IMG/VR virus record: IMGVR_UViG_3300020469_003050
Location: 62,001-126,000 of that record
Reading direction: 5' to 3' (one strand)
Length of the DNA: 64,000 nucleotides
Part shown: in pieces, positions 32,008 to 52,980 of the stretch
Numbering within the stretch: the stretch's first letter is position 1
Layout of the letters: each line of letters starts with the position of its first letter
The notes under the pieces: generated by a model
Seen by the model: only the letters and a program-made list of their open reading frames with translations
Database searches by the model: none
Told to the model about the DNA's origin: nothing
Program-made: the position numbers and the translations under genes

Positions 32008-32696
32008 TAAAAATCTATTTCCCTTCCTTTGTTTTCCCATGTACCAAATCTTGTAGGCTCTGCACCTTTAGGTCCACCCAACTCAGTAGGTATTTCCCAC
32101 GGTAAAGGTTTAGATTTATCTATTATTGGTTTAGGTAAACAAAATACTAAATGTGTTCTTAATATCTTACTTGCGTTTATGGCGGTGTGTCTTTTTGTAG
32201 TATCAACTTTATATACTCCACCATATGGTATTCTGCATACTTTATCATCGATAACCATAAAACATTTATCATCAGTTACTAAAGGAATATGCAATCTTGG
32301 TGTGTTGTCTTTATGATATGTTAAACATTTTTTCATTCCTAACATCATAAATCTACCTCTCAGGACTCCATATTCTTCGTATAATGCATTTACTACTTCG
32401 CCTATATATGTACCTTTCCATATATCACAAACTAGATTAAATACATCTTCTTCTAGTACTACATCACGTACTTTAGGTCCTGAGTTTTCGTAATCTTGTT
32501 CTGGAAAGTAATTATCCCAATCGTATAGCAAACTGCCACAACTATCAGTTAATTGCTTTTCACCCTCAATACCTTCTCTACATTGAACTGCTATCTGATA
32601 TTCATTATCAATAAGTTTCTGTTCAATGTCAAGTCCTTTGAACTCTCCTACAAGTCTCTTGTAATCGAATTCTATGTCTAATTTTTCTACACTCAT
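32007..32696 (-). CDS. 2OG-Fe(II)/Asp-Asn beta-hydroxylase-like oxygenase
   Basis: YHKD...RLHIPL...HTAIN...RTHLV. Confidence 0.7.
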   Translation of the reverse strand: MSVEKLDIEFDYKRLVGEFKGLDIEQKLIDNEYQIAVQCREGIEGEKQLTDSCGSLLYDWDNYFPEQDYENSGPKVRDVVLEEDVFNLVCDIWKGTYIGEVVNALYEEYGVLRGRFMMLGMKKCLTYHKDNTPRLHIPLVTDDKCFMVIDDKVCRIPYGGVYKVDTTKRHTAINASKILRTHLVFCLPKPIIDKSKPLPWEIPTELGGPKGAEPTRFGTWENKGREIDF

Positions 32697-33613
32697 TCAA
32701 AGTCCTCGTAATGTTTGTCGTGTTCTTGCAAAGCATAAGACAAACATAATCTATTAATATATCCGTCTCTTTCAAAATGATTGTCTTTATCTTTTGTACT
32801 AATGCCAAAGATAACACTATCACTTGGTTCTATTTCTAATGTCTTTGCTAACTCGATTTGTTTCTGTCTATATTTATTACACATATAATCAGGACTGAAC
32901 TCTTTCATTAATTCTGAATGTATTTTCATTCCAGCCATCTGTGTATAAAAGTGTTGATTTTGTAATTGCAATGCGGTACGTTCAACATTTCTTTTATATA
33001 ACATACCTGTACGCAATCCTCCAGTAGCGAATGTCTTACTGAAACTAAATGCTACATGGGTTATGCATTTATGATTTAAATCTAATCTAGGTACTTCTGC
33101 TACACCAAACAAACAACAATCTATGAATATAGCAACATTTCTTTTATTACATGTTTCTATTATTCTATCCCAGTCAAAATGTACGTTCCCAGTAGCACTA
33201 AAAGGATAACTTATAATCAAAGATGAATTGATTGGTATGTCTTTATATGTATCTAATACAGGTATCCCTAGGTCCCTGTGATACGTGTACTCGCCTCTGA
33301 GTACATGTAAGTATTTTGCAGTCTCATAGAAGTCGGTAAATGCATCAGTAATACCGTTAGTAACTAATCTATTAGTAAACTTATCAAGTCCCATTATCTT
33401 AAACTTTTTACTAGAATGTATCCACTCATCATATTGTTCTAAGAATGCCATTTGGTCATGTAATATTGAAAAGTCATAAGAGTCATTAAAGATATTAACT
33501 GAACTTCCTACCTCAATAACATCTTCATCTACAATAGCTTTTGCTTTACGAATAGCCTGTTCTCTATTCTCACAATGTTCTGTAAATAAATCTATCTTAT
33601 CTAATCTTTTCAT
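32693..33613 (-). CDS. PLP-dependent aminotransferase-like (fold I)
   Basis: PFSATGN, IFIDC and FSFSKTF..GLRTG (PLP lysine). Confidence 0.7.
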   Translation of the reverse strand: MKRLDKIDLFTEHCENREQAIRKAKAIVDEDVIEVGSSVNIFNDSYDFSILHDQMAFLEQYDEWIHSSKKFKIMGLDKFTNRLVTNGITDAFTDFYETAKYLHVLRGEYTYHRDLGIPVLDTYKDIPINSSLIISYPFSATGNVHFDWDRIIETCNKRNVAIFIDCCLFGVAEVPRLDLNHKCITHVAFSFSKTFATGGLRTGMLYKRNVERTALQLQNQHFYTQMAGMKIHSELMKEFSPDYMCNKYRQKQIELAKTLEIEPSDSVIFGISTKDKDNHFERDGYINRLCLSYALQEHDKHYEDFE

Positions 33614-34760
33614 TTGGATATATTCTTACTTGGTGGCCTGGTGCCCTTTTTGGTATCTTACTATCTGCACTTGAAACACAACTTTCACTAATACACGGCT
33701 TAGGCTTATCAAATAGTTTAAATCCACTTTCGATATATCCTAGTGGTTCATCTGCACAACTGTAAGAACGTTTAATACTTCCGTCTGGTTCTCTTATGAT
33801 AACACCTTTGAAGCCACTAGTACAATCCCAACCTTTGAACTTATTAAAGTTGAAAGCATTAAATCTTTCTGCTTGGTCTATGTACCACTTCTTGCCTTTG
33901 CTATCTTCAAACTCTACTTGCATGATTGGTGGGACACCTTTATCATCACCATTCATTATGTCTTGGTTCCACATAGTCTTTGCTGGCTTAGGTCTTATAA
34001 TCTTTTTACCTGTTGTCTTTTGTAAATCATCTGTGTATGCACGTTGTGGCATACCATTCTGCATAATCTCTAATTGCTTATCTGTATAACCTTTAACAAC
34101 AAAAGAAGCAGTAGGATCAGATTGAGGCTTTAACGTAACATTAATACCTCTGTTATGAAAGTATAATGCATTATCCCAATCAACATCAAATCTTTCAGGA
34201 ACAAGAACCATATTAATAGTTACTTGTATATCATATTCCATACATAATAAAAGTTTGTCTGCAAATTCTTCTGGCTTTGCAAACTCTCTATGATAACTGG
34301 CTGTAATACTTGCTCTATGCATTTTACCTACTATCTCAGCATACTTTATAAACCAATCTTTTTTACGAGAGATATTACTAGTCATATGAACGCTAGTGTA
34401 ATTACAATTATCGACATCATCAGCCAAATGTTGTAAGATGTCCAAGTATCCTGGATGGAAAGTAGGCTCACCACCAGATAAACTAAAATGAAAACTATTA
34501 AACCCATTATCACGTGCTTGCCTCTTTATCTCATCAATAGTTGCTAAACACAATTCTGTAGGTCTATGGTCTTTTCTATCTGACCTAGCATAAGGCCAAC
34601 AGTAACTACATTTATAATTACAGAAACGACCTAGTAACCAAGACACTGAGAATAAATCTCTATACAATAAAGTACGTTGTCCTACTTTGACAATATCATC
34701 AAAAGGTATCTTAGTAAAATCATACTGTGACCATTTAAGTGATTGCTTATCTATTTCCAT
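33597..34760 (-). CDS. Radical SAM protein (class C)
   Basis: WLLGRFCNYKCSYC, SGGEPT and C-terminal Cys cluster (WDCTSG...C...C...C). Confidence 0.9.
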   Translation of the reverse strand: MEIDKQSLKWSQYDFTKIPFDDIVKVGQRTLLYRDLFSVSWLLGRFCNYKCSYCWPYARSDRKDHRPTELCLATIDEIKRQARDNGFNSFHFSLSGGEPTFHPGYLDILQHLADDVDNCNYTSVHMTSNISRKKDWFIKYAEIVGKMHRASITASYHREFAKPEEFADKLLLCMEYDIQVTINMVLVPERFDVDWDNALYFHNRGINVTLKPQSDPTASFVVKGYTDKQLEIMQNGMPQRAYTDDLQKTTGKKIIRPKPAKTMWNQDIMNGDDKGVPPIMQVEFEDSKGKKWYIDQAERFNAFNFNKFKGWDCTSGFKGVIIREPDGSIKRSYSCADEPLGYIESGFKLFDKPKPCISESCVSSADSKIPKRAPGHQVRIYPNEKIR

Positions 34761-34761
34761 C

Positions 34762-36189
34762 TTATACCTTATATTTCTTCATTGCGTTATACAACTCTGG
34801 TAATTGTTTTTCCATGTTTTCGTTTCTGATTCCATCAAGTTTCTCATTGTATTGCCAGAACTTCTTGTTATTTTCTTCTGTGAACCAATCTTCATCATAC
34901 ATAAACTTAATATTATTATCAAGTAATTGGTCCATTTTCATTATAGCCCACTCTTTGTTTGCAGGCTTAATCATTCCCATTGCCATAGGATTTTTCTTAG
35001 CGAGTGAATGATAGTCAATATTATTTACTATTTCTGTTTTGAACTCTGTTCTAAATTCTTCCCATTTATCACGTACTTGGTCTTTTACTTCTAATGGTAG
35101 AAATCTTGTTGCTAATTCATGTGGTTTATGTATTGGGTGTGCATTAATAAATGGCTTAGGATTATTCTTTAGCATAGGAGATATAACTGCAAAGTCTTGT
35201 TCTATCTTCCACTTTAAGAAATCTGTAAAATGAAAAGCATTCAGGGCACCAATAGTAAATGCTATCCAGGCTCTGAAATTCATTTTCTCTAAACCAACTT
35301 CATCTAGTCTTACTAAATTCTTTTCCATTAGTTTTGACTTAAGTGGGTTACGTACATATTCTAATGTCTCACCTATTCCGTCCATTGATATACCAAACTG
35401 AACTTGCTTAAATTGTTTCCATAACTCTAATGCTCTAGGTTGAATGTTAGTTAAGTTAGTATTGTATTCAAGTGTCATTTCTTTTGCTTTATCTACTTCG
35501 ACACAATACTTTAAGAAATCATAATGTTCTTCAATGATAAGAGGTTCACCACCTACTAGATAAACATGTTGCATTCCTTTTACGTTTTCTTTTAAATTCT
35601 CCCAGAAGTGATCCTTCTTAACCCAATCGTAATCGTTTGATACAAATCTACCTTTGTTATTCTTATACATTTCTACGATACCATGTGTATCTTTAAACTT
35701 ATTTGTACCCCACATCTTAACATAATCATCGTACCAAGAACTACTATCCATCGGAGAACACATACGACATTTTAAGTTACAGAAATTACCTAAACGAATA
35801 TCATAGTAAGTTTGTTTTATATGATTTAAATCTATTGTACCATCTTCTGAGGTATGTTCTTTCGCTTGTTCAAATGTTATATGTTGAGCAAATCTTTCGC
35901 CATCGTTAATACGTCTGGACTTCATACCTGATTTTTCTTCACGTAAACATCTAATACACTCTGCATGCCATTTGTTATCTAACATTGTTTTACGAATTTC
36001 TTTTGCTAGTGGAGAGTTAATCGCATCAGTAATCTTATCTTGTTTAAGATTATAGTTTGTCCCATCTTCTTTCTTATAGATACCTCGAGTAGGTCCTTGA
36101 TTGGCATGACAACATACACGCAAATCTCCATTTGCACGTGTTGAGATATTAATCCAAGGTAATATGCAAAATGTATCAGGCATATTCAT
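34762..36189 (-). CDS. Radical SAM protein with N-terminal Twitch/SPASM-like domain (class A)
   Basis: FCILPW..RVCC..CIRC; CNLKCRMC; GGEPL. Confidence 0.9.
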   Translation of the reverse strand: MNMPDTFCILPWINISTRANGDLRVCCHANQGPTRGIYKKEDGTNYNLKQDKITDAINSPLAKEIRKTMLDNKWHAECIRCLREEKSGMKSRRINDGERFAQHITFEQAKEHTSEDGTIDLNHIKQTYYDIRLGNFCNLKCRMCSPMDSSSWYDDYVKMWGTNKFKDTHGIVEMYKNNKGRFVSNDYDWVKKDHFWENLKENVKGMQHVYLVGGEPLIIEEHYDFLKYCVEVDKAKEMTLEYNTNLTNIQPRALELWKQFKQVQFGISMDGIGETLEYVRNPLKSKLMEKNLVRLDEVGLEKMNFRAWIAFTIGALNAFHFTDFLKWKIEQDFAVISPMLKNNPKPFINAHPIHKPHELATRFLPLEVKDQVRDKWEEFRTEFKTEIVNNIDYHSLAKKNPMAMGMIKPANKEWAIMKMDQLLDNNIKFMYDEDWFTEENNKKFWQYNEKLDGIRNENMEKQLPELYNAMKKYKV

Positions 36190-37414
36190 TCATCTCCGTA
36201 TCCTCAAAGTTCTTTTCTCCGTTTCCTCTGAAATCTAATTCTTTTCCACATGTCTTGCCACATATCCATAATCTGTCAGGAGAGTTTATCTCCCAACTAT
36301 CTACTAAATCATTTGAAAAGTATGGTGAGTTTAGTATATCATGAATGCTATGCTTTGACAAGTCATTAAATCCTTCTCCGTATTTTCTATTCATAATAGC
36401 ATTGTCTTCGATACGTCTAGGTGTTGCCATGTCATGTCCTACTTTACTGTAGTAATGTCCTTGCCAACAACAAGGCCAAACTTTACCTTCGTAATCTACA
36501 AATATACTTTTATCTCTCATAGTCTGACAAGCAATGTCTGTAGCTTTTACATAATTATCAAATGTCTTATGTTTCTTAATCACTTTTTCAACGTTGTTTG
36601 TTGTATTTGCATTATCTGTTTTCTCTGGTGCCTTCAATATAGTAGCCATTGCTTTTGCTTTTTCTTCTGTAGTTTTTGCTTTTTTCTTTTCCATGGCTAC
36701 GTGTTGTTTCGCAACAAATTTCAATTCTGTTTTTGTTTCTACTTTTTCTTCTTTGTCGCCTGCATAATGTGTAGGTATTACATAGCGATTAGATTTCTTA
36801 TATCTAAATTTAACAAAGCCCATCTTATCTGCTAATGCTTTGGCTTCTTCAATTTGATGTTCGTTGTGTGCAAATGCAATAAAGTCCCATCTTGCTAGTC
36901 CACCAGCATCTATGAATGCCTGTGCATTTTCCATTATCTTGTTAAAGTTTGTATTCACTCTATATAAATGATTAGTATCCTCTAACCCATCTACTGCGAA
37001 AATAACTTTATCAGGCTTTCTCATTATACTTGCTAACTCTATCCACCACTCTGGTTTATGTACTGAACCATTCGTACTCAGCGTTACTTGTGGAACTCCA
37101 GCGTCTTTGTACATTCTTATAATCTCTAATAGATGAGGATACATAATTGGATCACCAAAGTTACCATTGATAAAAACATGATTAGGTAAGAACGGTTTCA
37201 TTTCTTCTATCATGTTTGTTAACAACTGTGGATCTGTATCAAGTAAATGTACATCATCACGTTTCTTTAATACTACTTCACCACCTTCTACTGCACCATC
37301 CATACCAGTAGTTCTTCCACACATAGGACATAATGCATTACATCGTGAGGTTAACTCTAAGTGTAACACACCTACATCAAATTTTATATATCTTAGTTTC
37401 TCTTGCTTCGCCAT
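36176..37414 (-). CDS. Radical SAM protein with C-terminal SPASM-like domain (class B)
   Basis: CNALCPMC, GNFGDP, YRVN and PCCW...CGKTCG. Confidence 0.9.
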   Translation of the reverse strand: MAKQEKLRYIKFDVGVLHLELTSRCNALCPMCGRTTGMDGAVEGGEVVLKKRDDVHLLDTDPQLLTNMIEEMKPFLPNHVFINGNFGDPIMYPHLLEIIRMYKDAGVPQVTLSTNGSVHKPEWWIELASIMRKPDKVIFAVDGLEDTNHLYRVNTNFNKIMENAQAFIDAGGLARWDFIAFAHNEHQIEEAKALADKMGFVKFRYKKSNRYVIPTHYAGDKEEKVETKTELKFVAKQHVAMEKKKAKTTEEKAKAMATILKAPEKTDNANTTNNVEKVIKKHKTFDNYVKATDIACQTMRDKSIFVDYEGKVWPCCWQGHYYSKVGHDMATPRRIEDNAIMNRKYGEGFNDLSKHSIHDILNSPYFSNDLVDSWEINSPDRLWICGKTCGKELDFRGNGEKNFEDTEMNEYA

Positions 37415-38994
37415 TTTAAAAATAACTCTTCCGGATATCCGTATGCGTGATTAATTTCTTCTAATTTCATTCCTCTAGTTGGTGAACCATCCCAATCTGC
37501 ACTATGCAATCTAAGATGTTTGTTTTTATCGCACATTTTCTTTACTACTTCTTTGTAGATATCTCTACGTTCTTCATATGATAGTAACCACGTAGTATAT
37601 CTTGTTGTAATATAATTACTACTCCATACCACACTATCAAATCCTTCTTCATGTGGTTGAATTCTATCTACAAGAGGCTGATAGTCTCTACATAAATCTG
37701 CTACTCCGTATGTTATATTAGGATTATGTTTAACTTTCTCATGCATTTCATAGAAGTCTTCCATTGTATCAAAGATTCTTAGAATGCTTTTTTGATATGC
37801 CTCTTTTGCTTTTTCTCTTTCACTATCCCAATTAGGTGACATGAAATCAAAGTCTTCATAAATTGATATCAGGGCTTTATCAGTCTTATACCATTCATCG
37901 TGTAAATAATCTAAGTACTGATTAAAGTCTCTCGGATCCCATTCAGTGTGTAACCATTTTCTTGCTTCTAAACTGTTCTCTGATATATCAAAGTAATGTA
38001 GACCTACATTCTCTACATCAGTATTAGGGTTCCAATTATTTAAGAATGCAAATGTTTTAAATCCTGCGGCTACACTGTAAATATTCTTTAGTGGAAACTT
38101 TCTAGGAACAAATATAACATCATTTACTGACTCTGTATTCATAACCCATATGGCATCTGGTGAGCGTTGAACTGTATAGGCTTGATATTGTAAGAAGTCT
38201 TTTTTAGTTTGACCTAGATTACTTTCGTGTGCTTTAAAGTTAGCACAATCTTCTCTAAAGAACTTTTTGAATTCTTCTTGTTCTTCTTTAATCTCTGGAT
38301 ACAAATATGTTTTAGTCTTACGAGCCTGCTCATCAAAGTTTAATACTGATAGTCCTGCTTTTAAACTCTCATTGATTAGATTCCAACCAAAGCCTGTACG
38401 ATTAATTGTTTCTTGTTCTGTTCCCGGTGACAAATACTTAGGCGTATGTCCGTCATGAAAGTTTTCTGTACTTCTCACAGCCTGTCTAACTTCCTGTTGC
38501 TTAACCCCAAAGTCTCCAAACGCAGGTCTTCCCATTGCTTTCCACATAGGATAATTGATAACGAAACATTGCTCATGTAATCTAAACCATCTATCTTTGT
38601 GTTGGTCATCAAGTATATGTCCCATTAATAAAAACTTATTTGCTTTAGCATCTGCTAACCAATCATGATTGCAATACTCTCTGAATAAACTATAACCATG
38701 TTCCAGTGGTTGCCACGTATCATATAATATGTTACCGTATGCTTGAACTACTAAAAGAACAATATCACTTTCTTCTGGATCATTGGCTAAGTCTGCTAGT
38801 ATCTTATCAACTGTATCCTCTTCGTAAATCTTATGTCTATAATGACTGTAATTGTTTCTAAGAAAGTTATAAGTCATCTGTCTAGTGTATTGTGATATTT
38901 CGTCATCACCAATAGTTTTAGATGTATCTAATACTGCACATCTAACTCTCTTGCTAAAATTGGTTGAACGTTGATGGTCTGTGTGTTTAGTCAT
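37393..38994 (-). CDS. Hypothetical protein (533 aa)
   Basis: Long ORF within the operon; no recognised motif. Confidence 0.6.
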   Translation of the reverse strand: MTKHTDHQRSTNFSKRVRCAVLDTSKTIGDDEISQYTRQMTYNFLRNNYSHYRHKIYEEDTVDKILADLANDPEESDIVLLVVQAYGNILYDTWQPLEHGYSLFREYCNHDWLADAKANKFLLMGHILDDQHKDRWFRLHEQCFVINYPMWKAMGRPAFGDFGVKQQEVRQAVRSTENFHDGHTPKYLSPGTEQETINRTGFGWNLINESLKAGLSVLNFDEQARKTKTYLYPEIKEEQEEFKKFFREDCANFKAHESNLGQTKKDFLQYQAYTVQRSPDAIWVMNTESVNDVIFVPRKFPLKNIYSVAAGFKTFAFLNNWNPNTDVENVGLHYFDISENSLEARKWLHTEWDPRDFNQYLDYLHDEWYKTDKALISIYEDFDFMSPNWDSEREKAKEAYQKSILRIFDTMEDFYEMHEKVKHNPNITYGVADLCRDYQPLVDRIQPHEEGFDSVVWSSNYITTRYTTWLLSYEERRDIYKEVVKKMCDKNKHLRLHSADWDGSPTRGMKLEEINHAYGYPEELFLKWRSKRN

Positions 38995-39793
38995 TCACTT
39001 TTTCCCAACTGTCTATCATAATATCTTCATAACTTTTGCCACCATACTGTCCGTGTACAATCATATGAACTCTTACTTCATCTGTATCATTCATCACTGC
39101 ATGTTGATGTCCCACATTCATCTTAATCATACGACCAGGTTTCCACGGAACATATGCATTATCGTCAATCATTTTAAAATAACAATGCTCGGGATTGTTT
39201 AATGATATATTCAATGGTCCTAACTTATTATGTTCATAATCATTATGAGGAGTAATGTATCCGCCTGGTTCTAAGTACATATAACGAACTCTATCGAATG
39301 ACATATAACCTGGAATAGACTTAATCATTTCTACTGTCTTAGGACATTTGTCTGCAATCTCTGTCCAATGATATGCTTCTCTCACTTCTTCTTCGCTTTT
39401 AAAATCAAAACCCATGGCTTTAACATCTTTACTATCCCAATGCTGAGATACATGTTTACCTAAACCATGTAATGTTAAACTACGCCAGCCTCTGTGTCCA
39501 TAATCATCTGGGTTACTTTCATCGTAATCATTTTTTCTATGTTGAATAGCTTCATTATACACTGCCATTGCTTCGCCCCAACATGCTTTCCAATCGAACT
39601 CAGGAACATCTAACTCTAACCAAGGGATGCCTGACTCGTGTGAAATCCATTTAGCTTTTCTGAATCTTGCTGACTCTGGAAACTTAGGCTCATTGAATAT
39701 TGCATCTATAAATGCACTAGGTACAGTATCAAAACTATAACTATTTCTATCTTTAAATACTTCTTCGATTATGTTTGGGTAATTAATTGTCAA
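38987..39793 (-). CDS. Asp/Asn beta-hydroxylase-like 2OG oxygenase
   Basis: LEPGGYITPHND, HAVMN and RVHMIVH. Confidence 0.8.
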   Translation of the reverse strand: MTINYPNIIEEVFKDRNSYSFDTVPSAFIDAIFNEPKFPESARFRKAKWISHESGIPWLELDVPEFDWKACWGEAMAVYNEAIQHRKNDYDESNPDDYGHRGWRSLTLHGLGKHVSQHWDSKDVKAMGFDFKSEEEVREAYHWTEIADKCPKTVEMIKSIPGYMSFDRVRYMYLEPGGYITPHNDYEHNKLGPLNISLNNPEHCYFKMIDDNAYVPWKPGRMIKMNVGHQHAVMNDTDEVRVHMIVHGQYGGKSYEDIMIDSWEKVND

Positions 39794-41330
39794 TGTCTAA
39801 CTCCTGCTGATTAACGTGAAACCCTGAATCTTCTAACTCTTTTAGTAATCTATCATCGAACTCTCCGTCCCAATCTTCACCATCTTCTGGTGTCCAATCT
39901 AAAAGAGGAGCCATCTCAGGAAACACATCTCTAAAATTTGTATCTCTTATACCGTCCATCTTATTGATATACTCAATAAACTCTGGCATACGTTGTCGTG
40001 ACCAGTCACCACTATTCATAAATGAAAGCATACCTCTTAGTCTTTTAATACCGTAGTTTGCATTTTTCCATTCATCATAGTTTGTGACACCATCACATTT
40101 TTCCCAGTTTGCATCAAGCCACTCAATAAACTTGTCATACTTTGCAACTGTCATTTCTTTGAACCACTTAGGTAAAACTTTAACATTTAAATGAGGTGGG
40201 TGATAAACAAAGTGATAGTTAATCATACCTGCACCTAGTGGCCATAAGTTAATCTTTTTAAAATTCTGTTCAATCTTCCACTTAACAAAGTCAGGAAGAT
40301 AATATATGTTAAGAGCCTGAACTGCACAAGCAACTGTAACTTCTACGTTAGGTCCTGTGTTATCTAATAAATGAAATTGTCTTACTGTGTGTTCCCATTC
40401 ACTTGGAAAACGTATGTAATCATTCATAAGACCTATACTGTCTACGCTATAATGGAAACGTACACGCTTGAATTGTTTCCACAAGTCAAATAAACGTTGT
40501 GGCATTTCTAAACCATTTGAGTTATATCTTAATTCAATACCGGGAGCATATCCTCTTTCTACAACTTCTTCAAGTAAAGTATAATGTTCTTCAATGATTG
40601 TAGCTTCCCCACCAGCAAAGTATAACTGTTTCATATGTGGGATTTGGTCATACAACTGATCCCAAAATGCATCATTCTTTTTATGCCAGTTATATGTTGC
40701 ACCATCTATCTGACCTTTGTTACCCCATTGCATAGTTTCTTTTAATGATTCGTTTTCAATCTGTGGATGTAATTTAATCCAATCTTTAACCCACATTGAA
40801 CTGTCATGAGGAGAACACATAATACATTTAAGATTACATTTAGAACCTAAACGCAAGTCTAAGTATCTAATCTTTGGAGGGATTGCACCGTCTTCTGTTG
40901 TCTCATCAAGTATCTCTTTCATATCAACTCTACGAGACCAGTACTCTGTTTCCCAATATCTTTTTGACATATGACCTGCATCTTCCTCTTTGTAACATTT
41001 CATACAACTAGGAGGCATTTCGTTATTAAGCATTTGCTTTCTAACATTCTTCATATAATCATTATTCCAACTTGACATCAAGTCACTATGATTTAAGTTT
41101 GAAGGTTTACCATCAGCATTTTTTAGAACACCTACTTCTCCGCCGTGTTCTTTATCATTTGTAGGACCAACTGAACTTGCATTTGCCGTACAACATACAC
41201 GCATATGTCCATTAGGTCTTGTACTTAAATGAACCCACGGTAACAAACAAAATGTTTTTGTAGGTGCACCTGTTCTTCGAACAAATTCGTTTAAGTTTTT
41301 CTCTAATTCTGGATTGTTTTTCTTGGACAT
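39783..41330 (-). CDS. Radical SAM protein with N-terminal Twitch-like domain (class A)
   Basis: FCLLPW..RVCC..CMKC; CNLKCIMC; AGGEA. Confidence 0.9.
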   Translation of the reverse strand: MSKKNNPELEKNLNEFVRRTGAPTKTFCLLPWVHLSTRPNGHMRVCCTANASSVGPTNDKEHGGEVGVLKNADGKPSNLNHSDLMSSWNNDYMKNVRKQMLNNEMPPSCMKCYKEEDAGHMSKRYWETEYWSRRVDMKEILDETTEDGAIPPKIRYLDLRLGSKCNLKCIMCSPHDSSMWVKDWIKLHPQIENESLKETMQWGNKGQIDGATYNWHKKNDAFWDQLYDQIPHMKQLYFAGGEATIIEEHYTLLEEVVERGYAPGIELRYNSNGLEMPQRLFDLWKQFKRVRFHYSVDSIGLMNDYIRFPSEWEHTVRQFHLLDNTGPNVEVTVACAVQALNIYYLPDFVKWKIEQNFKKINLWPLGAGMINYHFVYHPPHLNVKVLPKWFKEMTVAKYDKFIEWLDANWEKCDGVTNYDEWKNANYGIKRLRGMLSFMNSGDWSRQRMPEFIEYINKMDGIRDTNFRDVFPEMAPLLDWTPEDGEDWDGEFDDRLLKELEDSGFHVNQQELDIDN

Positions 41331-41337
41331 ACTGTAT

Positions 41338-42408
41338 TTATTTCACCTTAATTTTCGTTACTTCTGTGTCCGATACACAACTGCACCAAGTTTGTGGGCA
41401 TATTAATCCATCTGTAGGAAAGTCTATTTCATCTGGTTTGTTTATATGTCCATGAACTAGTTTAGTAAAACAACTGTTACCACTTGTTATAGTTCCATTT
41501 AATTGAACAACTAATGCTTCAATTCCTATCATACACTTCCAGCCTTTCCACGTATTGTGTCCTTGTTCCATAATATGATTTGGGTTATTGAATACTACTG
41601 ATTTGCCTGTCTTAGTATTAAGATAACGCATTTGTTTACCCATACTTTTTCTAAGGAACTTTCTTTTTGCTACAAGATGTACTGCTTCTTTTGAATCACT
41701 TTGTTCTATATCTTGCCAATGCTTTGGTTGTCCATCATATCTACGCAATATTTCAAACGCACCTTCTGGATATACAAACGTATTGTTACTGCCTAATGTT
41801 TCTTGTAATGCTTTTGAATTATGCGTTATACATTTAGAATTCTCATGGTAATACTTTGCCGCTTCAATACATCTATCAAGTAACGGAGGATATATAGCTG
41901 ACTGAATAGAACATATTGTTCCCTTATCCATAAGTATGTTTGATACATCTGTTACATGTTTATAATCTGCACTTTGTGGATGATAACTTATAATAACTTC
42001 ATCAAATATATTTGCATTCTTCTCCCACCAGCGTAGGGTTCTTGAACCATTGGTCAATATTCTCACGCTGGAACTTGAGTCATATTCTTTCATTTTATGA
42101 AATACCTCTGAGAACTTAGGCCATACTGTTGGTTCGCCACCTAATAAGTTCCATAGTATTCTTTTACCTGGTGCATACTTTCTGTAATGGTCTGTTAATC
42201 TTTTTGTAAACTCTAATACTACATCAACTTCTGGCCAAGGAGTTGAACCATCATGAAACTCCTCATCACAATAAGTACAGGCATAATTACAGGTATTACC
42301 CATCATCCAATCAACTACGATATAATCATTACCAACTATAGGTTCGTATCTATCATATTGACTATGATACGAATCATTGGCTTTATATCTTAGTTTTAAT
42401 TCAGCCAT
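41338..42408 (-). CDS. Radical SAM protein (class C)
   Basis: WMMGNTCNYACTYC, GGEPT and WKCMIG...CPQTWCSC. Confidence 0.9.
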   Translation of the reverse strand: MAELKLRYKANDSYHSQYDRYEPIVGNDYIVVDWMMGNTCNYACTYCDEEFHDGSTPWPEVDVVLEFTKRLTDHYRKYAPGKRILWNLLGGEPTVWPKFSEVFHKMKEYDSSSSVRILTNGSRTLRWWEKNANIFDEVIISYHPQSADYKHVTDVSNILMDKGTICSIQSAIYPPLLDRCIEAAKYYHENSKCITHNSKALQETLGSNNTFVYPEGAFEILRRYDGQPKHWQDIEQSDSKEAVHLVAKRKFLRKSMGKQMRYLNTKTGKSVVFNNPNHIMEQGHNTWKGWKCMIGIEALVVQLNGTITSGNSCFTKLVHGHINKPDEIDFPTDGLICPQTWCSCVSDTEVTKIKVK

Positions 42409-43499
42409 TACTTGAACTGCTCCGCAAATGCATCGAACTCTTTACCACATTTCTGTGAACATACCATTGGTTTCCCTGCATGTACATTTGGTTGTTTCCA
42501 ACTATCTACTAATCTATGAGAAAAGTATTCATTGTTTAATACATATTCTATTCCATGTCTCTTAGCATCAAATTCATCTTTACCACCTGACTGTTGTAGA
42601 AGTTCCCATACTTGATTTTCTCCTGGCTTCTGCCACCACTTATACATATTACCAGCTACCCAACAACATGGAAGAATTAATCCTTCTGCACTAATATACA
42701 TATTCTTTTCAGCCGCAACTTTACAACTGATTTGTACATTATCAAAATACTTTTCTAATGAACCATGCTTGTTTGTAATTTCTTTAATCTTATCTAGTGC
42801 TTTATTCTGATACTTAACTTCCTTTGGTTGTTGTAGTAATTGTGTTTCAGCACCTTTTCTATTCTTTGCTTGATGTTCATCTTTCTTAACTTGTTTCATT
42901 GTAGAAAAGAAACGACCTGTCTTTTTAGGTATGAACTTTTTAAAGCCTGTTTTCTCTGCTAATGCTCTAGCCTCTTCTACTTGATGTTCATTGTGTTCAA
43001 AGATTAAGTAATCCCAATGTGCTTTACCACCTGCCTCAATAAACGCTACCGCATTTTCCCACGCTATATCCCAATTAACATTCTGTCTATATAAATGATT
43101 TGTATCTTTCAGTCCATCAAATCCAAACTTAACATAACTCCAGTTACCTAATGTCTTTGCTAATTCTCTCCACCACTCTGGTTTCTTCGCACCAGCGTTG
43201 GTATTCATTCCCAGCGTTAACTCCCGTTTCTGTGAACGAAAGTATTGCATGACTTCTAATGTATCTTTAGCAACAATAGGATCACCAAAGTTACCACACA
43301 TATAAATTCTTTCTAACTGCTTTACAAACTCTGGAGGCATCATCTCCTGAATATCTTGTAATGATAATTCATGCATACCAAGATTAGGATTATCTTTACC
43401 ACCATGTACGTTTCTATCGCACATAGGACAAGCGGCTTGACACTTTTCAGTTATTTCCAAGTGTATTGCTCTTACTTCATCATATTTGTAAATCATCAT
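42408..43499 (-). CDS. Radical SAM protein with C-terminal SPASM-like domain (class B)
   Basis: CQAACPMC, GNFGDP and PCCW...CSQKCG. Confidence 0.9.
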   Translation of the reverse strand: MMIYKYDEVRAIHLEITEKCQAACPMCDRNVHGGKDNPNLGMHELSLQDIQEMMPPEFVKQLERIYMCGNFGDPIVAKDTLEVMQYFRSQKRELTLGMNTNAGAKKPEWWRELAKTLGNWSYVKFGFDGLKDTNHLYRQNVNWDIAWENAVAFIEAGGKAHWDYLIFEHNEHQVEEARALAEKTGFKKFIPKKTGRFFSTMKQVKKDEHQAKNRKGAETQLLQQPKEVKYQNKALDKIKEITNKHGSLEKYFDNVQISCKVAAEKNMYISAEGLILPCCWVAGNMYKWWQKPGENQVWELLQQSGGKDEFDAKRHGIEYVLNNEYFSHRLVDSWKQPNVHAGKPMVCSQKCGKEFDAFAEQFK

Positions 43500-44775
43500 A
43501 GTCCTTTTTTATGATTTCATATATTTCTGGTATGTAATCTTTTATGTGTTGATTTCTTACTTTATCAAATCTCTTTGTTGCTCTTGCTAGATGTATAGGA
43601 TTATATTGTTCCTTGTCATTCAACATTTGATATAATGCAGGAATAACTCTATATGAATATCTGTTCTCCCATGGTTCAATCTCTTTTATTAACGAATAAA
43701 TGTATGGAGTACGAATATCTACTGGGATATTTCTTATTGAAGACCACTCTGGTGTTCTAAGAATCTCTGGTCTCATAGTTATACCTATACTTTGTGCCCA
43801 CTTAATCGTATCAAGCAAATTAAATAAATTATATGCTTGCCATGTAAAACTTATTTCACTTACCGCATGTGGATGTTTTTGTGCTATTTCATGATATAAT
43901 CTAATTGTTTTGTCTATCGTTTTAAATTTAACTGGTGTTCTGATATATTCAACTACTGATTCAGTTCCATCAATACTATAATTGAATGATACGTTATTAA
44001 ACTTTGCTAATTTATCAACAAATCTTCTATTATTATTTGTACAGTTTGTAGTAAAATGTAATGGAACATTAAGATATTTCTTATCAATTAATATATCTAA
44101 GAACTTATCAACTTCTGGCATAATAGTGGGTTCTCCGCCTAAGAACTTAATTCTATTTCCTTTGTCTGCCGCTTCTAATAAAAATTCTATATTATGCTCA
44201 TTTGCTAAAACATCTGACCTTATTATCTTTCCATGACCTAAAATAGGACGTAATAATTCTTGATTATCTTGTACTTCTTTTTCTATTTGTGAACTTGATA
44301 TAGGTCCGCACATTCTACATTTTAAATTACATAAGTTGCCTGGTCTAACGTCAATATCTATTGGTGCATTCCATTGATTACCTGTTTCTATATTTGGTTC
44401 AATCTTTGTACTGTACATAGTATTGAAATTAATTCTATCACTTCTACCACCTGCACTTTCTAAGTTATAACATTTAACACAAACATCTGGTTGTTCATTA
44501 CGCAAGAATTTCTTTCTGAACTCTTTGTAATAATCATTACTCCAACGTTTCTTTAAATCTAATTCAGTATCATCTTCTACTACATTGTACTCGGTTGACA
44601 TACAACAAACTCTTTGCCCTTCATTACTGTGAACATACATATGTGCAAATGGTGCCGCACAAAAGTTACTTGTATCGGCTTTGCCATTTTGGTGTTCCTT
44701 CAACAATTCTTTAAAAGCCTCTCTTGCTTTTATTTTCTCTTTGTCTATATAACCTCTGACTTGAGCATTTTTCAC
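43480..44775 (-). CDS. Radical SAM protein with N-terminal Twitch-like domain (class A)
   Basis: FCAAPF..RVCC..CVKC; CNLKCRMC; GGEPT. Confidence 0.9.
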   Translation of the reverse strand: MKNAQVRGYIDKEKIKAREAFKELLKEHQNGKADTSNFCAAPFAHMYVHSNEGQRVCCMSTEYNVVEDDTELDLKKRWSNDYYKEFRKKFLRNEQPDVCVKCYNLESAGGRSDRINFNTMYSTKIEPNIETGNQWNAPIDIDVRPGNLCNLKCRMCGPISSSQIEKEVQDNQELLRPILGHGKIIRSDVLANEHNIEFLLEAADKGNRIKFLGGEPTIMPEVDKFLDILIDKKYLNVPLHFTTNCTNNNRRFVDKLAKFNNVSFNYSIDGTESVVEYIRTPVKFKTIDKTIRLYHEIAQKHPHAVSEISFTWQAYNLFNLLDTIKWAQSIGITMRPEILRTPEWSSIRNIPVDIRTPYIYSLIKEIEPWENRYSYRVIPALYQMLNDKEQYNPIHLARATKRFDKVRNQHIKDYIPEIYEIIKKDYDDLQI

Positions 44776-46188
44776 TTATTTCTCTCCGATAATCATATAC
44801 CGGTTGTAATGCTCCAATTCTAGTGTCCCAGTGAATATATTTTTAGATAGTTTCAACTCTTTAGCCCAACTATCAACATCTGTTTTAGTATTAACAACTG
44901 TTTCATCTTCATGTTCAATAAAATCATTATTCTGTAATATCACTAGTGTACCCTTTGGAATAGCATTCCACCATTTGTCAAACTCTGCAATATGTTCGCA
45001 ACTTGTATTGATTACACATGTTGGATGACCAATAGTATGTGTTGTATCCATGACTTCGAACTTAACTGCATCACTGTATTTATAATGTTTTATTGGCAGT
45101 GTTTCCTCAGAAAACTTCAATTCTGCTATATCTTTTACGAATGATTTGAACTTCATATTGTCAATTATATACTCTTTATTGAGTGTATCTGCTGGATTAT
45201 CTGTAGTAGGATCACTATCAAAGCTATAGATATTACCTTCAATCTTGCATCTTTCAAACAATAATGCTGGTAAAACTCCATACCAACCTGCACAAGTGTA
45301 AATAGTTTTACCTAAGTTTATATCATAATTATTCACAATGTCAATTAACCACAGTTTAGACTGTAACTGTCCTCTACTAAATGCATCAGTCAACGCTTGA
45401 CCTTCAAATCTTTTAGTCATTTTCTTCATATTCATAGGAATACTATACTTGCCTTCAGTAAGAGTGTGAACTAATTCAAATACTTTTGTTTTAAATATTG
45501 TTGCACTTTTTACGTTAGCAATATCTTCATTAGATTCATCAAAACCCTGAATAACTTTAAATAATAAATATAAGTCTGGATCAGTATCAACTGCAATAAT
45601 ATTTTTTAATGCACTTAATATTTCATCATCAGGGTATTCAATATTCATTATTACTCTGAATAATAATTCTGTTTGTGATTTAATAAAATTATGATTACCA
45701 CAAACATTTTTTAATGCACCTAATCCTTCTTCATCATCTATTATTTTTTCTAGTACATTAAATAATAAAAATACTAAGTCTCTATCAAACTCACCACCTT
45801 CCGCACAAATAGTATTTTTTAAATCATCTAATGTATCTGCATTGTCTGGATACATTCCATTCAAAACTCTAAACACAAGATACATTGATTTTCTATCAAT
45901 AGTTTCACATGCCATAAAGTTTCTTAATGCGTCCAATGAATCATCGTTTTGAGATATTTTGTCTAACACTTTAAACAGGACGAATGTGTTATCACAAACT
46001 TGTCTCTCATAAACGAGATTCATTAGAGCATTCATATTCGCTCTATGTTTCTTACCTAAGAAGTAAGAGCATAAAGTAAATATACTACTGAGTTCCTCAG
46101 TATTAACAACTCTTTCTAATTCAGATAGCATAGGTCTACTATTCCCATAAAGGAGATTTAATCTATCTGCAATTTCATACGGCTTCAT
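44776..46188 (-). CDS. Helical-repeat protein fused to SAM-dependent methyltransferase-like domain
   Basis: About 6 LFxV...L.ALKN repeats; DAFSRGQLQSKLWL, CAGWYG, SFDSD and INTSCEH. Confidence 0.6.
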   Translation of the reverse strand: MKPYEIADRLNLLYGNSRPMLSELERVVNTEELSSIFTLCSYFLGKKHRANMNALMNLVYERQVCDNTFVLFKVLDKISQNDDSLDALRNFMACETIDRKSMYLVFRVLNGMYPDNADTLDDLKNTICAEGGEFDRDLVFLLFNVLEKIIDDEEGLGALKNVCGNHNFIKSQTELLFRVIMNIEYPDDEILSALKNIIAVDTDPDLYLLFKVIQGFDESNEDIANVKSATIFKTKVFELVHTLTEGKYSIPMNMKKMTKRFEGQALTDAFSRGQLQSKLWLIDIVNNYDINLGKTIYTCAGWYGVLPALLFERCKIEGNIYSFDSDPTTDNPADTLNKEYIIDNMKFKSFVKDIAELKFSEETLPIKHYKYSDAVKFEVMDTTHTIGHPTCVINTSCEHIAEFDKWWNAIPKGTLVILQNNDFIEHEDETVVNTKTDVDSWAKELKLSKNIFTGTLELEHYNRYMIIGEK

Positions 46189-49928: not shown

Positions 49929-49957
49929 ATTATAGCAGATTACGTCTTGCTTGTAAA
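49929..49957 (-). promoter_or_regulatory. Minus-strand sigma70 promoter
   Basis: Reverse complement reads TTTACA-N17-TATAAT with TG extension, upstream of the 925-aa gene. Confidence 0.6.
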
Positions 49958-51505: not shown

Positions 51506-51599
51506 GCTTCTTTAATTCCTCTAATCTCTTTTTCATTTCTCTACGTCTTTTAAACTCTGTCCAAGGATAAAGAATTATATCAATTATCTTTCTAATCAT
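51483..51599 (-). CDS. 38-aa peptide ending PFIYK (not in ORF track)
   Basis: MIRKIIDIILYPWTEFKRRREMKKRLEELKKRDPFIYK; ATGA-coupled to the upstream gene, AAAGGA RBS. Confidence 0.65.
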   Translation of the reverse strand: MIRKIIDIILYPWTEFKRRREMKKRLEELKKRDPFIYK

Positions 51600-52315: not shown

Positions 52316-52325
52316 ATTTTAATCC

Positions 52326-52925: not shown

Positions 52926-52980
52926 AGGAAACTCCTGATAAATAATATCTGTACATAATGTATTTATACAAGAAGGGATT

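What the first reader, a model, noticed from the sequence alone, without database searches (positions are those of the whole stretch)
33597..44775. Radical SAM paralogs recur as A/B/C sets
Seen: three architectures. A = N-terminal C..PW/F..CC..CxxC then CNLKCxMC (43480, 39783, 34762). B = CxAxCPMC with GNFGDP and C-terminal PCCW (42408, 36176). C = WxxGxxCNYxCxYC with C-terminal WxC (41338, 33597). Transcription order is A-B-C-A-oxygenase-unknown-B-A-C, i.e. two complete triads plus one extra A. Inference: a three-component functional unit or heteromeric complex that was duplicated and diverged to act on different sites.
Basis: partly seen in the sequence, partly recalled or inferred. Interest (0 to 1): 0.6.

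Follow-up and report, generated by a model that had tools for sequence, protein, structure and literature searches.

The report
Variable radical-SAM gene island in jumbo phage
Seven radical-SAM enzyme genes of three real families sit in one operon of an uncultured 343-kb marine phage, but they are a conserved three-gene core plus freely varying extras copied from a bacterial sugar-coat gene cluster, not two duplicated triads.

Summary
All seven ORFs, their motifs and the order A-B-C-A-oxygenase-unknown-B-A-C are as described. The three classes are separate, well-supported clades. A is NCBIfam NF033640 (N-terminal twitch radical SAM). B and C are unnamed radical-SAM families with a C-terminal four-Cys auxiliary domain.

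The "two duplicated triads / heteromeric complex" reading is only partly supported. The phage (342,607 bp, T4-type capsid) has 11 A, 3 B and 2 C genes. In 40 distinct related arrays, A ranges 0-6, B 0-3 and C 0-3. Copy numbers do not covary positively, and A-B-C triplets are no commoner than chance.

What is conserved is one specific trio: orthologs of B1, A2 and C2, which are not adjacent in this window. Accessory radical-SAM genes are inserted between them. The same trio, at 45-66% identity, lies in chromosomes of bacteria whose record titles place them in Bdellovibrionota. There it is often contiguous and, in the one locus whose neighbours I annotated, sits among GT2 and GT-C glycosyltransferases.

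Best reading: a host-derived, hypervariable glycan or glycoconjugate tailoring island. The substrate and chemistry are inferred, not shown.

The parts
43480..44775 (-). A1: class A radical SAM with N-terminal twitch domain (431 aa). Accessory and fast-changing.
   Evidence: NF033640 294.8 bits against cut-off 170. Only 68-69% identical in the closest relatives, where neighbouring genes are 86-98%.
42408..43499 (-). B1: class B radical SAM with a C-terminal Cys domain (363 aa). Member of the conserved core trio.
   Evidence: PF04055 33.2 bits. Orthologs at 48-87% identity in 9 of 10 array-bearing phage records and about 45% in bacterial chromosomes. Invariant Cys in alignment A1.
41338..42408 (-). 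C1: class C radical SAM (356 aa). Accessory.
   Evidence: PF04055 36.9 bits. 21% identical to C2 and in a different deep subclade.
39783..41330 (-). A2: class A radical SAM (515 aa). Member of the conserved core trio.
   Evidence: NF033640 437 bits. Orthologs at 64-92% in 9 of 10 phage records and 58-67% in bacterial genomes. AlphaFold model pLDDT 86.
38987..39793 (-). 2-oxoglutarate/Fe(II) oxygenase of the Asp/Arg-hydroxylase (LpxO/OlsC-like) family (268 aa).
   Evidence: PF05118 61.4 bits. Weak LpxO and OlsC hits.
37393..38994 (-). Unknown 533-aa protein that travels with the oxygenase.
   Evidence: No Pfam, NCBIfam or PHROG family. Found together with the 268-aa oxygenase in relatives.
36176..37414 (-). 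B2: class B radical SAM (412 aa). Accessory.
   Evidence: PF04055 45.1 bits and SPASM 22.8 bits at residues 296-371. Orthologs found in only about 15 viral loci.
34762..36189 (-). A3: class A radical SAM (475 aa). Semi-conserved.
   Evidence: NF033640 353 bits. Homologs at about 35-44% in many arrays. Closest paralog is the solitary A at genome position 302964 (283 bits).
33597..34760 (-). C2: class C radical SAM (387 aa). Highly conserved 3' anchor of the island and member of the core trio.
   Evidence: More than 599 viral stretches at 65-100% identity. 4859 protein clusters at E<=1e-5. 58-65% identical orthologs in 8 bacterial genomes. Model pLDDT 87; nearest structure BlsE, Z 16.4.
32693..33613 (-). 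PLP-fold (aminotransferase class I/II-like) protein, 306 aa.
   Evidence: PF00155 25.2 bits. Homologs follow C2 in many loci and occur in bacterial locus L115.
32007..32696 (-). Second Asp/Arg-hydroxylase-like oxygenase (229 aa) with a DUF1674-type C-terminal motif.
   Evidence: PF05118 35.4 bits and PF07896 37.7 bits. Homologs follow C2 in 32 loci.
31549..32040 (-). RpiB/LacAB-type sugar-phosphate isomerase. Last gene of the co-directional block.
   Evidence: PF02502 154.6 bits.
44776..46188 (-). Unknown 470-aa protein: variable helical-repeat N-terminus and a conserved C-terminal part.
   Evidence: No family found. The C-terminal 30-60% is conserved upstream of B1 in relatives and in bacterial locus L115 at 33%.
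46188..47132 (-). Unknown 314-aa protein.
   Evidence: No family found. Conserved in relatives.
47125..49902 (-). 925-aa protein with weak GT2-like (GT-A) signals. By eye it holds several divergent repeats of one module.
   Evidence: PF00535 21.1 bits, below the cut-off. Atlas neighbours are viral hypotheticals, some carrying GT2 or GT92. A single-module homolog (39%) lies in bacterial locus L115. Self-BLAST did not confirm the repeats.
49940..51505 (-). NodU/CmcH/TobZ-type carbamoyltransferase.
   Evidence: PF16861 178 bits and PF02543 147 bits.
51596..53180 (-). DUF6071 protein and a cupin-domain protein. Probable 5' end of the co-directional block.
   Evidence: PF19547 38.4 bits. PF07883 20.4 bits, below the cut-off.
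49929..49957 (-). Best sigma-70-like promoter match in the region (TTTACA-17-TATAAT, 11 of 12, TG), in the 38-nt gap upstream of the 925-aa gene.
   Evidence: Promoter-like sites overall are no more frequent than in shuffles, so this is only a lead.

Best explanation
The seven genes belong to three ancient families of radical-SAM enzymes. Each has the CxxxCxxC SAM cluster plus one four-cysteine auxiliary (twitch-type) cluster domain. That domain is N-terminal in class A (NCBIfam NF033640) and C-terminal in classes B and C.

The genes lie in one tightly packed, co-directional block of about 21.6 kb (window 31549-53180). The block also holds a GT-like multi-module protein, a carbamoyltransferase, two Asp/Arg-hydroxylase-type oxygenases, a PLP-fold protein and a sugar-phosphate isomerase.

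The block is a phage-borne version of a bacterial cell-envelope glycan or glycoconjugate biosynthesis and tailoring locus. A conserved core (orthologs of B1, A2 and C2) does the invariant chemistry. The other radical-SAM genes (A1, C1, B2, A3, and the many different ones in related phages) are exchangeable tailoring enzymes. Their number and order change from phage to phage.

Each enzyme is expected to cleave SAM reductively to a 5'-deoxyadenosyl radical and abstract a hydrogen from a C-H bond of a shared substrate. The likely substrate is a sugar, nucleotide-sugar or lipid-linked glycan. The outcome would be epimerisation, oxidation, dehydration, decarboxylation or C-C bond formation, as in BtrN, BlsE and DesII.

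The enzymes would act in sequence as separate proteins rather than as a fixed A:B:C complex.

Shown: the families, the core and accessory structure, the hypervariability, and the bacterial counterpart among glycosyltransferases.
Inferred: the substrate class, the reaction types, sequential action, and a Bdellovibrionota host.
For: Families:
- define the classes.
- Invariant Cys sets: A has C28/C46/C109/C112 plus C165/C169/C172. B has C25/C29/C32 plus C296/C315/C385/C389. C has C47/C51/C54 plus C313/C335/C356/C361.

Genome census:
- 17 radical-SAM ORFs: 11 A, 3 B, 2 C and 1 other.

Hypervariability:
- 40 distinct arrays in 63 loci upstream of the C2 anchor, with no positive covariation and no excess of ABC triplets.

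Core trio:
- B1 and A2 orthologs are present in 9 of 10 array-bearing records.
- C2 is at 65-100% identity in every locus fetched (a consequence of searching with C2), and it matches 4859 protein clusters.
- B1-A2-C2 are directly adjacent in L104.
- The trio is contiguous in 5 of 8 bacterial genomes that carry a C2 ortholog, in different orders and orientations.

Glycan context:
- Bacterial locus G167 (2.9-Mb contig) holds A2 at 66.5%, C2 at 66% and B1 at 45% identity.
- Beside them are four GT2 glycosyltransferases, a PMT_2 (GT-C) protein, an FAD amine oxidoreductase, and homologs of the phage 470-aa, 925-aa and PLP-fold proteins.
- The locus is flanked by housekeeping genes.
- The window flanks hold a carbamoyltransferase, RpiB/LacAB and a weak GT2 signal.
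- The second phage island holds a DegT aminotransferase and an NAD epimerase/dehydratase.

Structure:
- The C2 model's nearest solved structure is the sugar-nucleoside decarboxylase BlsE (Z 16.4, 271 residues). This effectively ties with peptide-modifying enzymes.

Fe-S support:
- The phage encodes an A-type Fe-S carrier.
Against: - No substrate is identified.
- Within the phage arrays most non-radical-SAM genes have no family. No bona fide glycosyltransferase passes a curated cut-off in the window itself.
- Fold matches are generic for the SPASM/twitch clade. They include peptide maturases (SuiB, anSME, SkfB, CteB, EpeE) at Z values within 1-2 of BlsE.
- The glycan context rests mainly on one bacterial locus annotated in detail (G167) and a partly annotated second (G039).
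- PMT_2 and Asp/Arg-hydroxylase families also act on proteins and on lipid A. The substrate could be a glycoprotein or a lipid.
- Arrays were viewed through a 10-kb flank, so many are truncated.
- The bacterial co-occurrence statistics are not corrected for phylogeny.
Confidence: 0.55

Rival explanations
1. First reader's model. An A+B+C three-component unit, possibly a heteromeric complex, was duplicated as a block and diverged. The window then holds two triads plus a spare A.
For: - The three classes co-localise and co-occur in bacteria.
- B and C genes are immediately adjacent in 10 of 23 full-length bacterial C genes.
- A conserved B1-A2-C2 trio stays contiguous through rearrangements.
- From my own knowledge, two radical-SAM proteins can work as one enzyme (CofG/CofH).
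Against: - Copy numbers do not covary: 11:3:2 in this genome, and 0-18: 0-5: 1-4 in related records.
- Correlations across 40 arrays are negative or nil. ABC triplets are at the chance level, and only 2 of 40 arrays have equal numbers.
- The conserved trio cuts across the proposed triads.
- Within-class paralogs are not sisters, and A3's nearest paralog lies outside the island.
- A occurs alone in 29 of 49 bacterial genomes.
- No cross-class gene fusions were seen.
Confidence: 0.12
2. The enzymes are peptide or protein maturases (RiPP-like, or modifying a phage or host protein such as a virion or surface protein), as most characterised SPASM/twitch radical-SAM enzymes are.
For: - Nearest solved structures include SuiB, anSME, CteB, SkfB, EpeE and PqqE.
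- Weak NCBIfam hits to many peptide maturases.
- Asp/Asn-beta-hydroxylase-family oxygenases lie in the operon.
- A PMT_2 family protein (which includes protein mannosyltransferases) lies in the bacterial locus.
Against: - No PqqD/RRE domain was detected in any of the seven proteins.
- The genes overlap or abut, leaving no room for a precursor-peptide gene inside the array.
- All scores to peptide-maturase models are far below their cut-offs.
- The bacterial context is dominated by glycosyltransferases.
Confidence: 0.15
3. The island hypermodifies phage DNA or nucleotides as an anti-restriction measure. This would explain its hypervariability and its position next to thymidylate synthase.
For: - ThyA, or ThyX in some relatives, lies just beyond the C2 end of the island in many loci.
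- C-class proteins give weak viperin and QueE-type hits.
- By recall, radical-SAM, PLP, carbamoyl and glycosyl chemistry all occur in known thymidine and cytosine hypermodification pathways.
- Hypervariability fits an arms race.
Against: - ThyA is on the opposite strand, convergent with the island. It is the only PF00303 gene in the genome. It is replaced by the non-homologous ThyX in relatives, which fits ordinary dTMP synthesis.
- In one relative C2 sits in a different neighbourhood with no ThyA.
- Orthologous loci lie in bacterial chromosomes among GT2 and GT-C genes.
- Viperin-model scores are 40-47 bits against a cut-off of 180.
Confidence: 0.08

Closest known systems
NCBIfam NF033640, 'twitch domain-containing radical SAM protein' (N_Twi_rSAM)
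   Same: A1, A2, A3 and eight further genes of this phage match end to end, well above the cut-off. They share the N-terminal four-Cys domain followed by CxxxCxxC.
   Different: I found no paper on the family's function. Here it occurs at 11 copies per phage genome, and up to 18 in a half-complete relative. It is always with or near two other unnamed radical-SAM families.
Sugar-acting twitch radical-SAM enzymes: BlsE, BtrN, DesII
   Same: A radical-SAM core plus one auxiliary-cluster domain. BlsE is the top structural match of C2 (Z 16.4, rmsd 4.0, 271 residues). BtrN and DesII are also listed. The carbohydrate gene context is similar.
   Different: Sequence identity is only 11-18%. No family model is passed. 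The Z values are not clearly above those of peptide-modifying relatives. The auxiliary domain of class A sits at the opposite end of the protein.
SPASM/twitch peptide maturases: anSME, SuiB, CteB, SkfB, EpeE, PqqE
   Same: They share the superfamily clade, and these are the top fold matches for A2 (Z about 12) and C2 (Z about 15). Pfam SPASM hits are weak.
   Different: - No RRE domain was detected.
- There is no precursor-peptide gene.
- Only four invariant auxiliary Cys are present (twitch-like), not the seven-Cys SPASM pattern.
- The genes sit in a glycosyltransferase-rich context.
Radical-SAM-rich phage genomes reported without explanation
   Same: - A T4-like marine environmental genome has 12 radical-SAM genes plus an A-type Fe-S carrier (PMC5332604).
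- Aeromonas phage 332-Vera has 8 (PMC12390700).
- Campylobacter phage CP220 and Vibrio phage K566 have clusters.
- This phage likewise has 17 radical-SAM genes and an A-type carrier.
   Different: Those reports count the genes. They do not resolve families, a conserved core, hypervariable arrays or bacterial counterparts.
Host-like cell-surface glycan gene islands of marine T4-like phages and hypervariable bacterial glycan loci (from my own knowledge)
   Same: Strain-to-strain gene-content variation in a fixed genomic position. The mix includes transferases, aminotransferases, epimerases and carbamoyltransferases.
   Different: Here the variable part is dominated by radical-SAM paralogs rather than by glycosyltransferases.

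Membership tests
Radical SAM superfamily (PF04055) | CxxxCxxC cluster motif and a Pfam score over the gathering threshold. | tested here: met
   All seven proteins have the motif. Six score 33-48 bits against a cut-off of 29.5. A2 scores 25.6 on Pfam but 437 bits on NF033640.
NF033640 N_Twi_rSAM (class A) | Whole-protein score of at least 170 bits, with the match covering the N-terminal Cys domain and the radical-SAM core. | tested here: met
   A1 scores 294.8, A2 437.0 and A3 353.1 bits, over profile positions 2-397 of 398. Four invariant N-terminal Cys are present.
NF033640 N_Twi_rSAM (classes B and C) | Whole-protein score of at least 170 bits. | tested here: not met
   B1 scores 38.7, B2 46.4, C1 29.4 and C2 40.1 bits, matching only the radical-SAM core.
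SPASM domain (two auxiliary clusters) | A seven-Cys motif that binds two auxiliary [4Fe-4S] clusters. | tested here: not met
   Only four invariant auxiliary Cys are present in A and C, and four plus one nearly invariant in B. Pfam SPASM scores are at or below the cut-off. The pattern fits the one-cluster twitch type. Cluster content itself is not testable here.
RiPP radical-SAM maturases | An RRE/PqqD-like leader-binding domain and an adjacent precursor-peptide gene. | tested here: not met
   No such domain appears in the Pfam or NCBIfam scans. Gene junctions overlap or are at most 8 nt, so no small ORF fits inside the array. Sensitivity for divergent RREs is limited.
Viperin / prokaryotic viperin (NF038283) | A score of at least 180 bits. 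| tested here: not met
   C1 scores 46.6 and C2 39.7 bits, over the N-terminal core only.
   Searches give ratios of A:B from 1 to 10 and A:C from 0 to 9. Array correlations are not positive. ABC triplets number 9 against 8.4 expected.
Conserved core trio (B1, A2, C2 orthologs) | The same three orthologs recur together, and stay adjacent, in distant genomes. | tested here: met
   Found in 9 of 10 array-bearing phage records. All 8 bacterial genomes with a C2 ortholog also have an A2-like gene next to it, or one gene away, plus a B gene. The three are contiguous in 5 of them. They are also contiguous in L104.
Glycan / glycoconjugate biosynthesis locus | Glycosyltransferases and sugar-modifying enzymes in the same locus, with a glycan product demonstrated. 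| tested here: inconclusive
   Context is met in bacterial locus G167, which has 4 GT2 genes and PMT_2. It is partly met in the phage: carbamoyltransferase, RpiB, DegT, an epimerase/dehydratase and a sub-threshold GT2 signal. The product is not testable with these tools.

The most novel reading that the evidence does not exclude
B1, A2 and C2 together form an obligate three-radical-SAM machine that builds a so far undescribed modified sugar or glycoconjugate scaffold. The exchangeable A, B and C paralogs then diversify that scaffold into a strain-specific 'code'. An abundant, uncultured lineage of about 340-kb marine phages carries the system to remodel the envelope of its host. That host is possibly a predatory Bdellovibrionota bacterium, for which no jumbo phage is known to me.
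Probability: 0.15. Interest if true: 0.8.

Novelty: new variant of a known kind. Interest (0 to 1): 0.55.

Why it matters
Radical-SAM-rich phage genomes have been noticed but left unexplained (PMC5332604, PMC12390700). This analysis gives them a structure:
- three enzyme families;
- a conserved trio;
- exchangeable accessory paralogs, up to 18 of one family in a half-complete genome;
- a bacterial chromosomal counterpart among glycosyltransferases.

The C2 family alone spans thousands of protein clusters in ocean metagenomes, so the lineage is abundant.

The work yields concrete targets for discovering new radical carbohydrate chemistry: the orthologs of B1, A2 and C2, and the NF033640 family, on whose function I found no paper. 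It also yields a testable host hypothesis for an uncultured jumbo phage. Finally, it points to cultured systems with related arrays, namely Vibrio phages K566 and K567.

Tried and rejected
- **DNA and protein searches with no result.** Megablast of the island against cultured phages found no match. tblastn of C2 against phages found none. Class A against plasmids found none.
- **Sequence search of solved structures.** Nothing useful came back.
- **Co-fold.** The co-fold of A2 with C2 gave no verdict (score 0.00, below the mark). This is no evidence either way.
- **Promoter and terminator scan.** Sites are no more frequent than in shuffles, and no signal divides the array into triads.
- **925-aa protein.** Self-BLAST did not confirm the repeats I see by eye.
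- **Suspected A-A fusions.** The '889-aa open frame' rows suggested fusions. They are rejected: the two ORFs are separated by a stop.
- **Second island.** Its accessory proteins are unrelated to those of the window.
- **PHROG 'tail protein'.** The gene at window 4363-5655 turned out to be a permease homolog, so it says nothing about virus type. The NCLDV capsid family was not found. A T4 Gp23 capsid and a terminase were found.
- **Fold searches.** They are generic for the SPASM/twitch clade and do not discriminate the substrate.
- **Literature.** Eight literature searches in all found no functional study of NF033640 or of these arrays.
- **Conserved partner proteins.** NCBIfam and Pfam gave nothing for them.

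Full report
**1. What is there**

The window is positions 62001-126000 of a 342,607-bp virus record with direct terminal repeats. The virus is a tailed phage with a T4-type major capsid protein. That protein is 69% identical to those of PA5oct-type jumbo phages. A large terminase is present and no NCLDV capsid was found.

From about 53180 down to 31549 every sizeable ORF is on the minus strand. Gene junctions overlap or are a few bases apart. Their motifs read exactly as described, and the order is A1-B1-C1-A2-oxygenase-unknown-B2-A3-C2.

Pfam calls all seven radical SAM. A1, A2 and A3 pass NCBIfam NF033640, 'twitch domain-containing radical SAM protein', at 295-437 bits against a cut-off of 170. 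B and C pass no specific family.

**2. Are the classes real?**

Yes.
- Among all 17 CxxxCxxC radical-SAM ORFs of the genome, within-class BLASTP scores are 39-283 bits (A), 157-214 (B) and 65 (C). Between-class scores never exceed 40 bits.
- In a tree of the 17 proteins plus 72 homologs, each class is one side of a branch with support 99, 100 and 98.
- Alignments show the architecture. Each class has the SAM-cluster triad plus four invariant Cys in an auxiliary domain. That domain is N-terminal in A and C-terminal in B and C.
- Four Cys fit a one-cluster twitch domain rather than a seven-Cys SPASM domain.

One caveat: homologs from other loci were labelled by best BLAST hit, which favours monophyly for those rows.

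**3. Test of the triad model inside this genome**

The genome has 11 A, 3 B, 2 C and one unrelated MoaA/TrsS-like radical-SAM gene.
- A second island, at genome positions 137439-146886, reads B-A-x-x-A-x-A-A (x = a gene that is not radical SAM). A DegT aminotransferase and an NAD epimerase/dehydratase lie next to it.
- Five A genes are solitary.
- A3's best paralog is the solitary A at genome position 302964, not A1 or A2.
- C1 and C2 are 21% identical and fall in different deep subclades.

None of this looks like a block duplication of an A-B-C unit.

**4. Test across related phages**

C2 is extremely widespread. More than 599 stretches in IMG/VR are 65-100% identical, and 4859 protein clusters match at E<=1e-5. 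It serves as a fixed 3' anchor.

I fetched 80 loci with 10-kb flanks and classified every ORF. Among the 63 loci with a full upstream flank there are 40 different arrays. Examples are AAAAAA-C, CCB-C, BBAAC-C, AAAAABB-C and CAAAAAA-C.
- A ranges 0-6, B 0-3, and C (besides the anchor) 0-3.
- Spearman correlations are A-B -0.30, A-C -0.10 and B-C -0.07.
- A-B-C triplets number 9 against 8.4 in shuffles.
- Only 2 of 40 arrays have equal numbers.
- 11 arrays lack B and one has no other radical-SAM gene at all.

Whole records give the following A/B/C counts:

| Record | A/B/C | Note |
|---|---|---|
| this genome | 11/3/2 | complete |
| G001 | 11/2/3 | 86% complete |
| G003 | 10/1/3 | |
| G004 | ~15/4/2 | |
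| G005 | 18/5/~2 | 51% complete |
| G006 | 0/0/1 | |
| G007 | 6/5/1 | |
| G008 | 2/2/2 | |

In G006, C2 sits alone in a different neighbourhood. The exact window order survives only in close relatives. Even there A1 and B2 are 68-69% identical while their neighbours are 86-98%. This suggests gene-by-gene replacement.

The limits are that flanks truncate many arrays and most records are fragments.

**5. What is conserved**

Orthologs of three particular genes recur:
- B1 at 48-87% identity;
- A2 at 64-92%;
- C2 at 65-100%.

B1 and A2 are present in 9 of 10 array-bearing records. In phage arrays B1 tends to open the array, C2 closes it, and A2 lies between. Variable genes are inserted around them.

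So a three-gene module with one member of each class does exist.

**6. Bacterial counterparts**

A scan of one genome per prokaryote species for A2 gave four loci. Two come from records titled Bacteriovoracaceae and Bdellovibrionales. In the first, B1-A2-C2 orthologs (46%, 67% and 63% identity) are directly adjacent.

- NF033640 is over its cut-off in 48 of 201 genomes, often at 8 or more copies on megabase contigs.
- This compares with 2 of 151 in the phylum of a Planctomycetota-titled genome and 0 of 14 control genomes.
- In the 201 genomes, A occurs in 49, B in 17 and C in 19. All three occur in 11, and A occurs alone in 29.
- The pairwise associations are strong (Fisher 2e-7 to 4e-11) but are not phylogeny-corrected.
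- C2 orthologs (58-65%) occur in 8 genomes. Wherever the contig extends beyond C2 (7 of the 8; in G205 it lies at a contig edge), an A2-like gene is adjacent or one gene away. All 8 genomes have a B gene.
- The three are contiguous in 5 genomes, in different orders and orientations. Adjacency that survives rearrangement is the classic signature of functional coupling.
- Ten of 23 full-length bacterial C genes have a B gene immediately next to them.

**7. Functional context**

The bacterial locus on a 2.9-Mb contig (G167) contains:
- homologs of the phage 470-aa protein, of a gene from the second island and of one module of the 925-aa protein;
- four GT2 glycosyltransferases (up to 114 bits);
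- an FAD amine oxidoreductase;
- a PMT_2 (GT-C) protein;
- a homolog of the PLP-fold protein;
- two A3-like genes, then A2, C2 and B1, then further B, C and A genes.

MoxR, DUF58 and PrkA housekeeping genes flank it. Only island genes hit the phage proteome, so it is not a prophage of this type.

A second bacterial locus (G039) holds 41-51% orthologs of the A genes of the second phage island. They sit with kinase-like and SGNH/GDSL proteins, between BipA/Dus and YceG.

In the phage, the island is flanked by a NodU/TobZ-type carbamoyltransferase, an RpiB/LacAB isomerase, two Asp/Arg-hydroxylase (LpxO/OlsC-like) oxygenases, a PLP-fold protein and a weakly GT2-like 925-aa protein.

Together this points to envelope glycan or glycoconjugate biosynthesis and tailoring. 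It does not prove it.

**8. Structure**

The AlphaFold models of A2 and C2 are confident (pLDDT 86 and 87).
- C2 aligns over its whole length to the twitch enzyme BlsE (Z 16.4). EpeE, SkfB, SuiB, CteB, viperin, PqqE, anSME and MoaA follow at Z 14.5-15.4. BtrN scores 11.8.
- A2 aligns only through its core (residues about 152-441) at Z about 12 to anSME, CteB, viperin-like enzymes and BlsE. Its N-terminal domain is not covered.

The folds place both proteins in the SPASM/twitch clade. They do not discriminate sugar from peptide substrates.

**9. Mechanism proposed**

- Established knowledge of the superfamily: each enzyme reduces its SAM-bound cluster, cleaves SAM, and the 5'-deoxyadenosyl radical abstracts a substrate hydrogen. 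The single auxiliary cluster serves electron transfer or substrate anchoring, as in BtrN, MoaA and SkfB.
- Inferred from context: the substrate is a sugar, a nucleotide-sugar or a lipid-linked glycan. The core trio installs an invariant modification. Accessory paralogs add position- or residue-specific changes such as epimerisation, oxidation, dehydration or decarboxylation. The oxygenases, the PLP enzyme, the carbamoyltransferase and the GT-like proteins complete the decoration.
- Inferred: the phage uses the island to change the host envelope, or to decorate itself, during infection. Its hypervariability mirrors that of bacterial surface-glycan loci.
- Weak inference: a Bdellovibrionota host. 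It rests on 58-67% identity of the core genes, the enrichment of NF033640 in that phylum, and low GC in both.

**10. Rivals**

- The duplicated-triad or complex model fails the covariation tests. A weaker form, in which the core trio acts as one unit, remains open.
- A peptide or protein substrate is compatible with the folds and with the hydroxylase and PMT_2 families. However, no RRE domain and no precursor gene are present.
- DNA hypermodification would explain the hypervariability and the neighbouring ThyA or ThyX. But that gene is convergent on the other strand, is the only one in the genome, and is replaced by a non-homolog in relatives. The bacterial counterparts also argue against this rival.

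**11. Known or new**

Class A belongs to a named family, but I found no paper on its function. B and C have no family model. Reports exist of phages with 8-12 radical-SAM genes (PMC5332604, PMC12390700), but they do not dissect them.

As far as the searched literature shows, the following are new:
- the three-family structure;
- the conserved trio;
- the hypervariable accessory set;
- the bacterial glycan-locus counterpart.

I rate it a new variant of a known kind: a host-like glycan island, dominated here by radical-SAM paralogs.

Noticed in passing
genome positions 137439-146886 (L003:7439-16886), outside the window: A second radical-SAM island reads B-A-x-x-A-x-A-A (x = a gene that is not radical SAM). 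It lies next to a DegT aminotransferase and an NAD epimerase/dehydratase. Its A genes have 41-51% orthologs clustered in a bacterial chromosome (G039).
   Followed up: partly
window 32007-32696 (-): An Asp/Arg-hydroxylase-like oxygenase ends in a DUF1674 (SDHAF4-type) C-terminal motif (Pfam E 2.7e-9). This is an odd combination in a phage.
   Followed up: no
window 4363-5655 (+): PHROGs calls this ORF a 'tail protein' (phrog_27398). Its tblastn matches in cultured records are annotated as YieG-type inorganic anion / sulfate permease-family transporters. The PHROG label looks wrong, and the phage appears to encode a membrane permease.
   Followed up: partly
window 21470-23146 (+): A tryptophan-halogenase-like protein (phrog_2928, E 5e-92).
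   Followed up: no
genome positions 33777-34079 (outside the window): An A-type Fe-S cluster carrier (PF01521, 58 bits). It matches the earlier report that radical-SAM-rich T4-like marine phages carry Fe-S assembly genes.
   Followed up: partly
L106 (contig CAWFCE010000002.1, positions 825416-846750): A 1.27-Mb contig labelled 'Candidatus Parcubacteria' carries B1, A2, A3 and C2 orthologs at 41-59% identity, within a run of 11 radical-SAM genes. A contig of that size with this content is unexpected for that phylum. The label and binning were not checked.
   Followed up: no
L011-L013, L017, L023-L025 compared with window 43480-44775 and 36176-37414: In the closest relatives A1 and B2 are only 68-69% identical, while flanking genes are 86-98%. 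This suggests single-gene replacement by recombination inside an otherwise collinear island.
   Followed up: partly
L083 (11149-11814, -) and other loci downstream of C2: The thymidylate synthase beyond the C2 end of the island is ThyA in some relatives and the non-homologous ThyX in others. This is positional conservation with non-orthologous replacement.
   Followed up: partly
L107 (Vibrio phage K566, positions 158148-177254): A cultured 255-kb Vibrio phage has its own cluster of at least four radical-SAM genes, including a class A homolog at 23% identity. A PagP-like lipid A acyltransferase gene and a nicotinamide phosphoribosyltransferase gene lie nearby. It is a possible experimental model.
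   Followed up: partly
window 52326-53180 (-): The cupin ORF as listed begins with a long Ser-rich, low-complexity stretch. The true start is probably an internal Met, so the 5' end of the block is uncertain.
   Followed up: no
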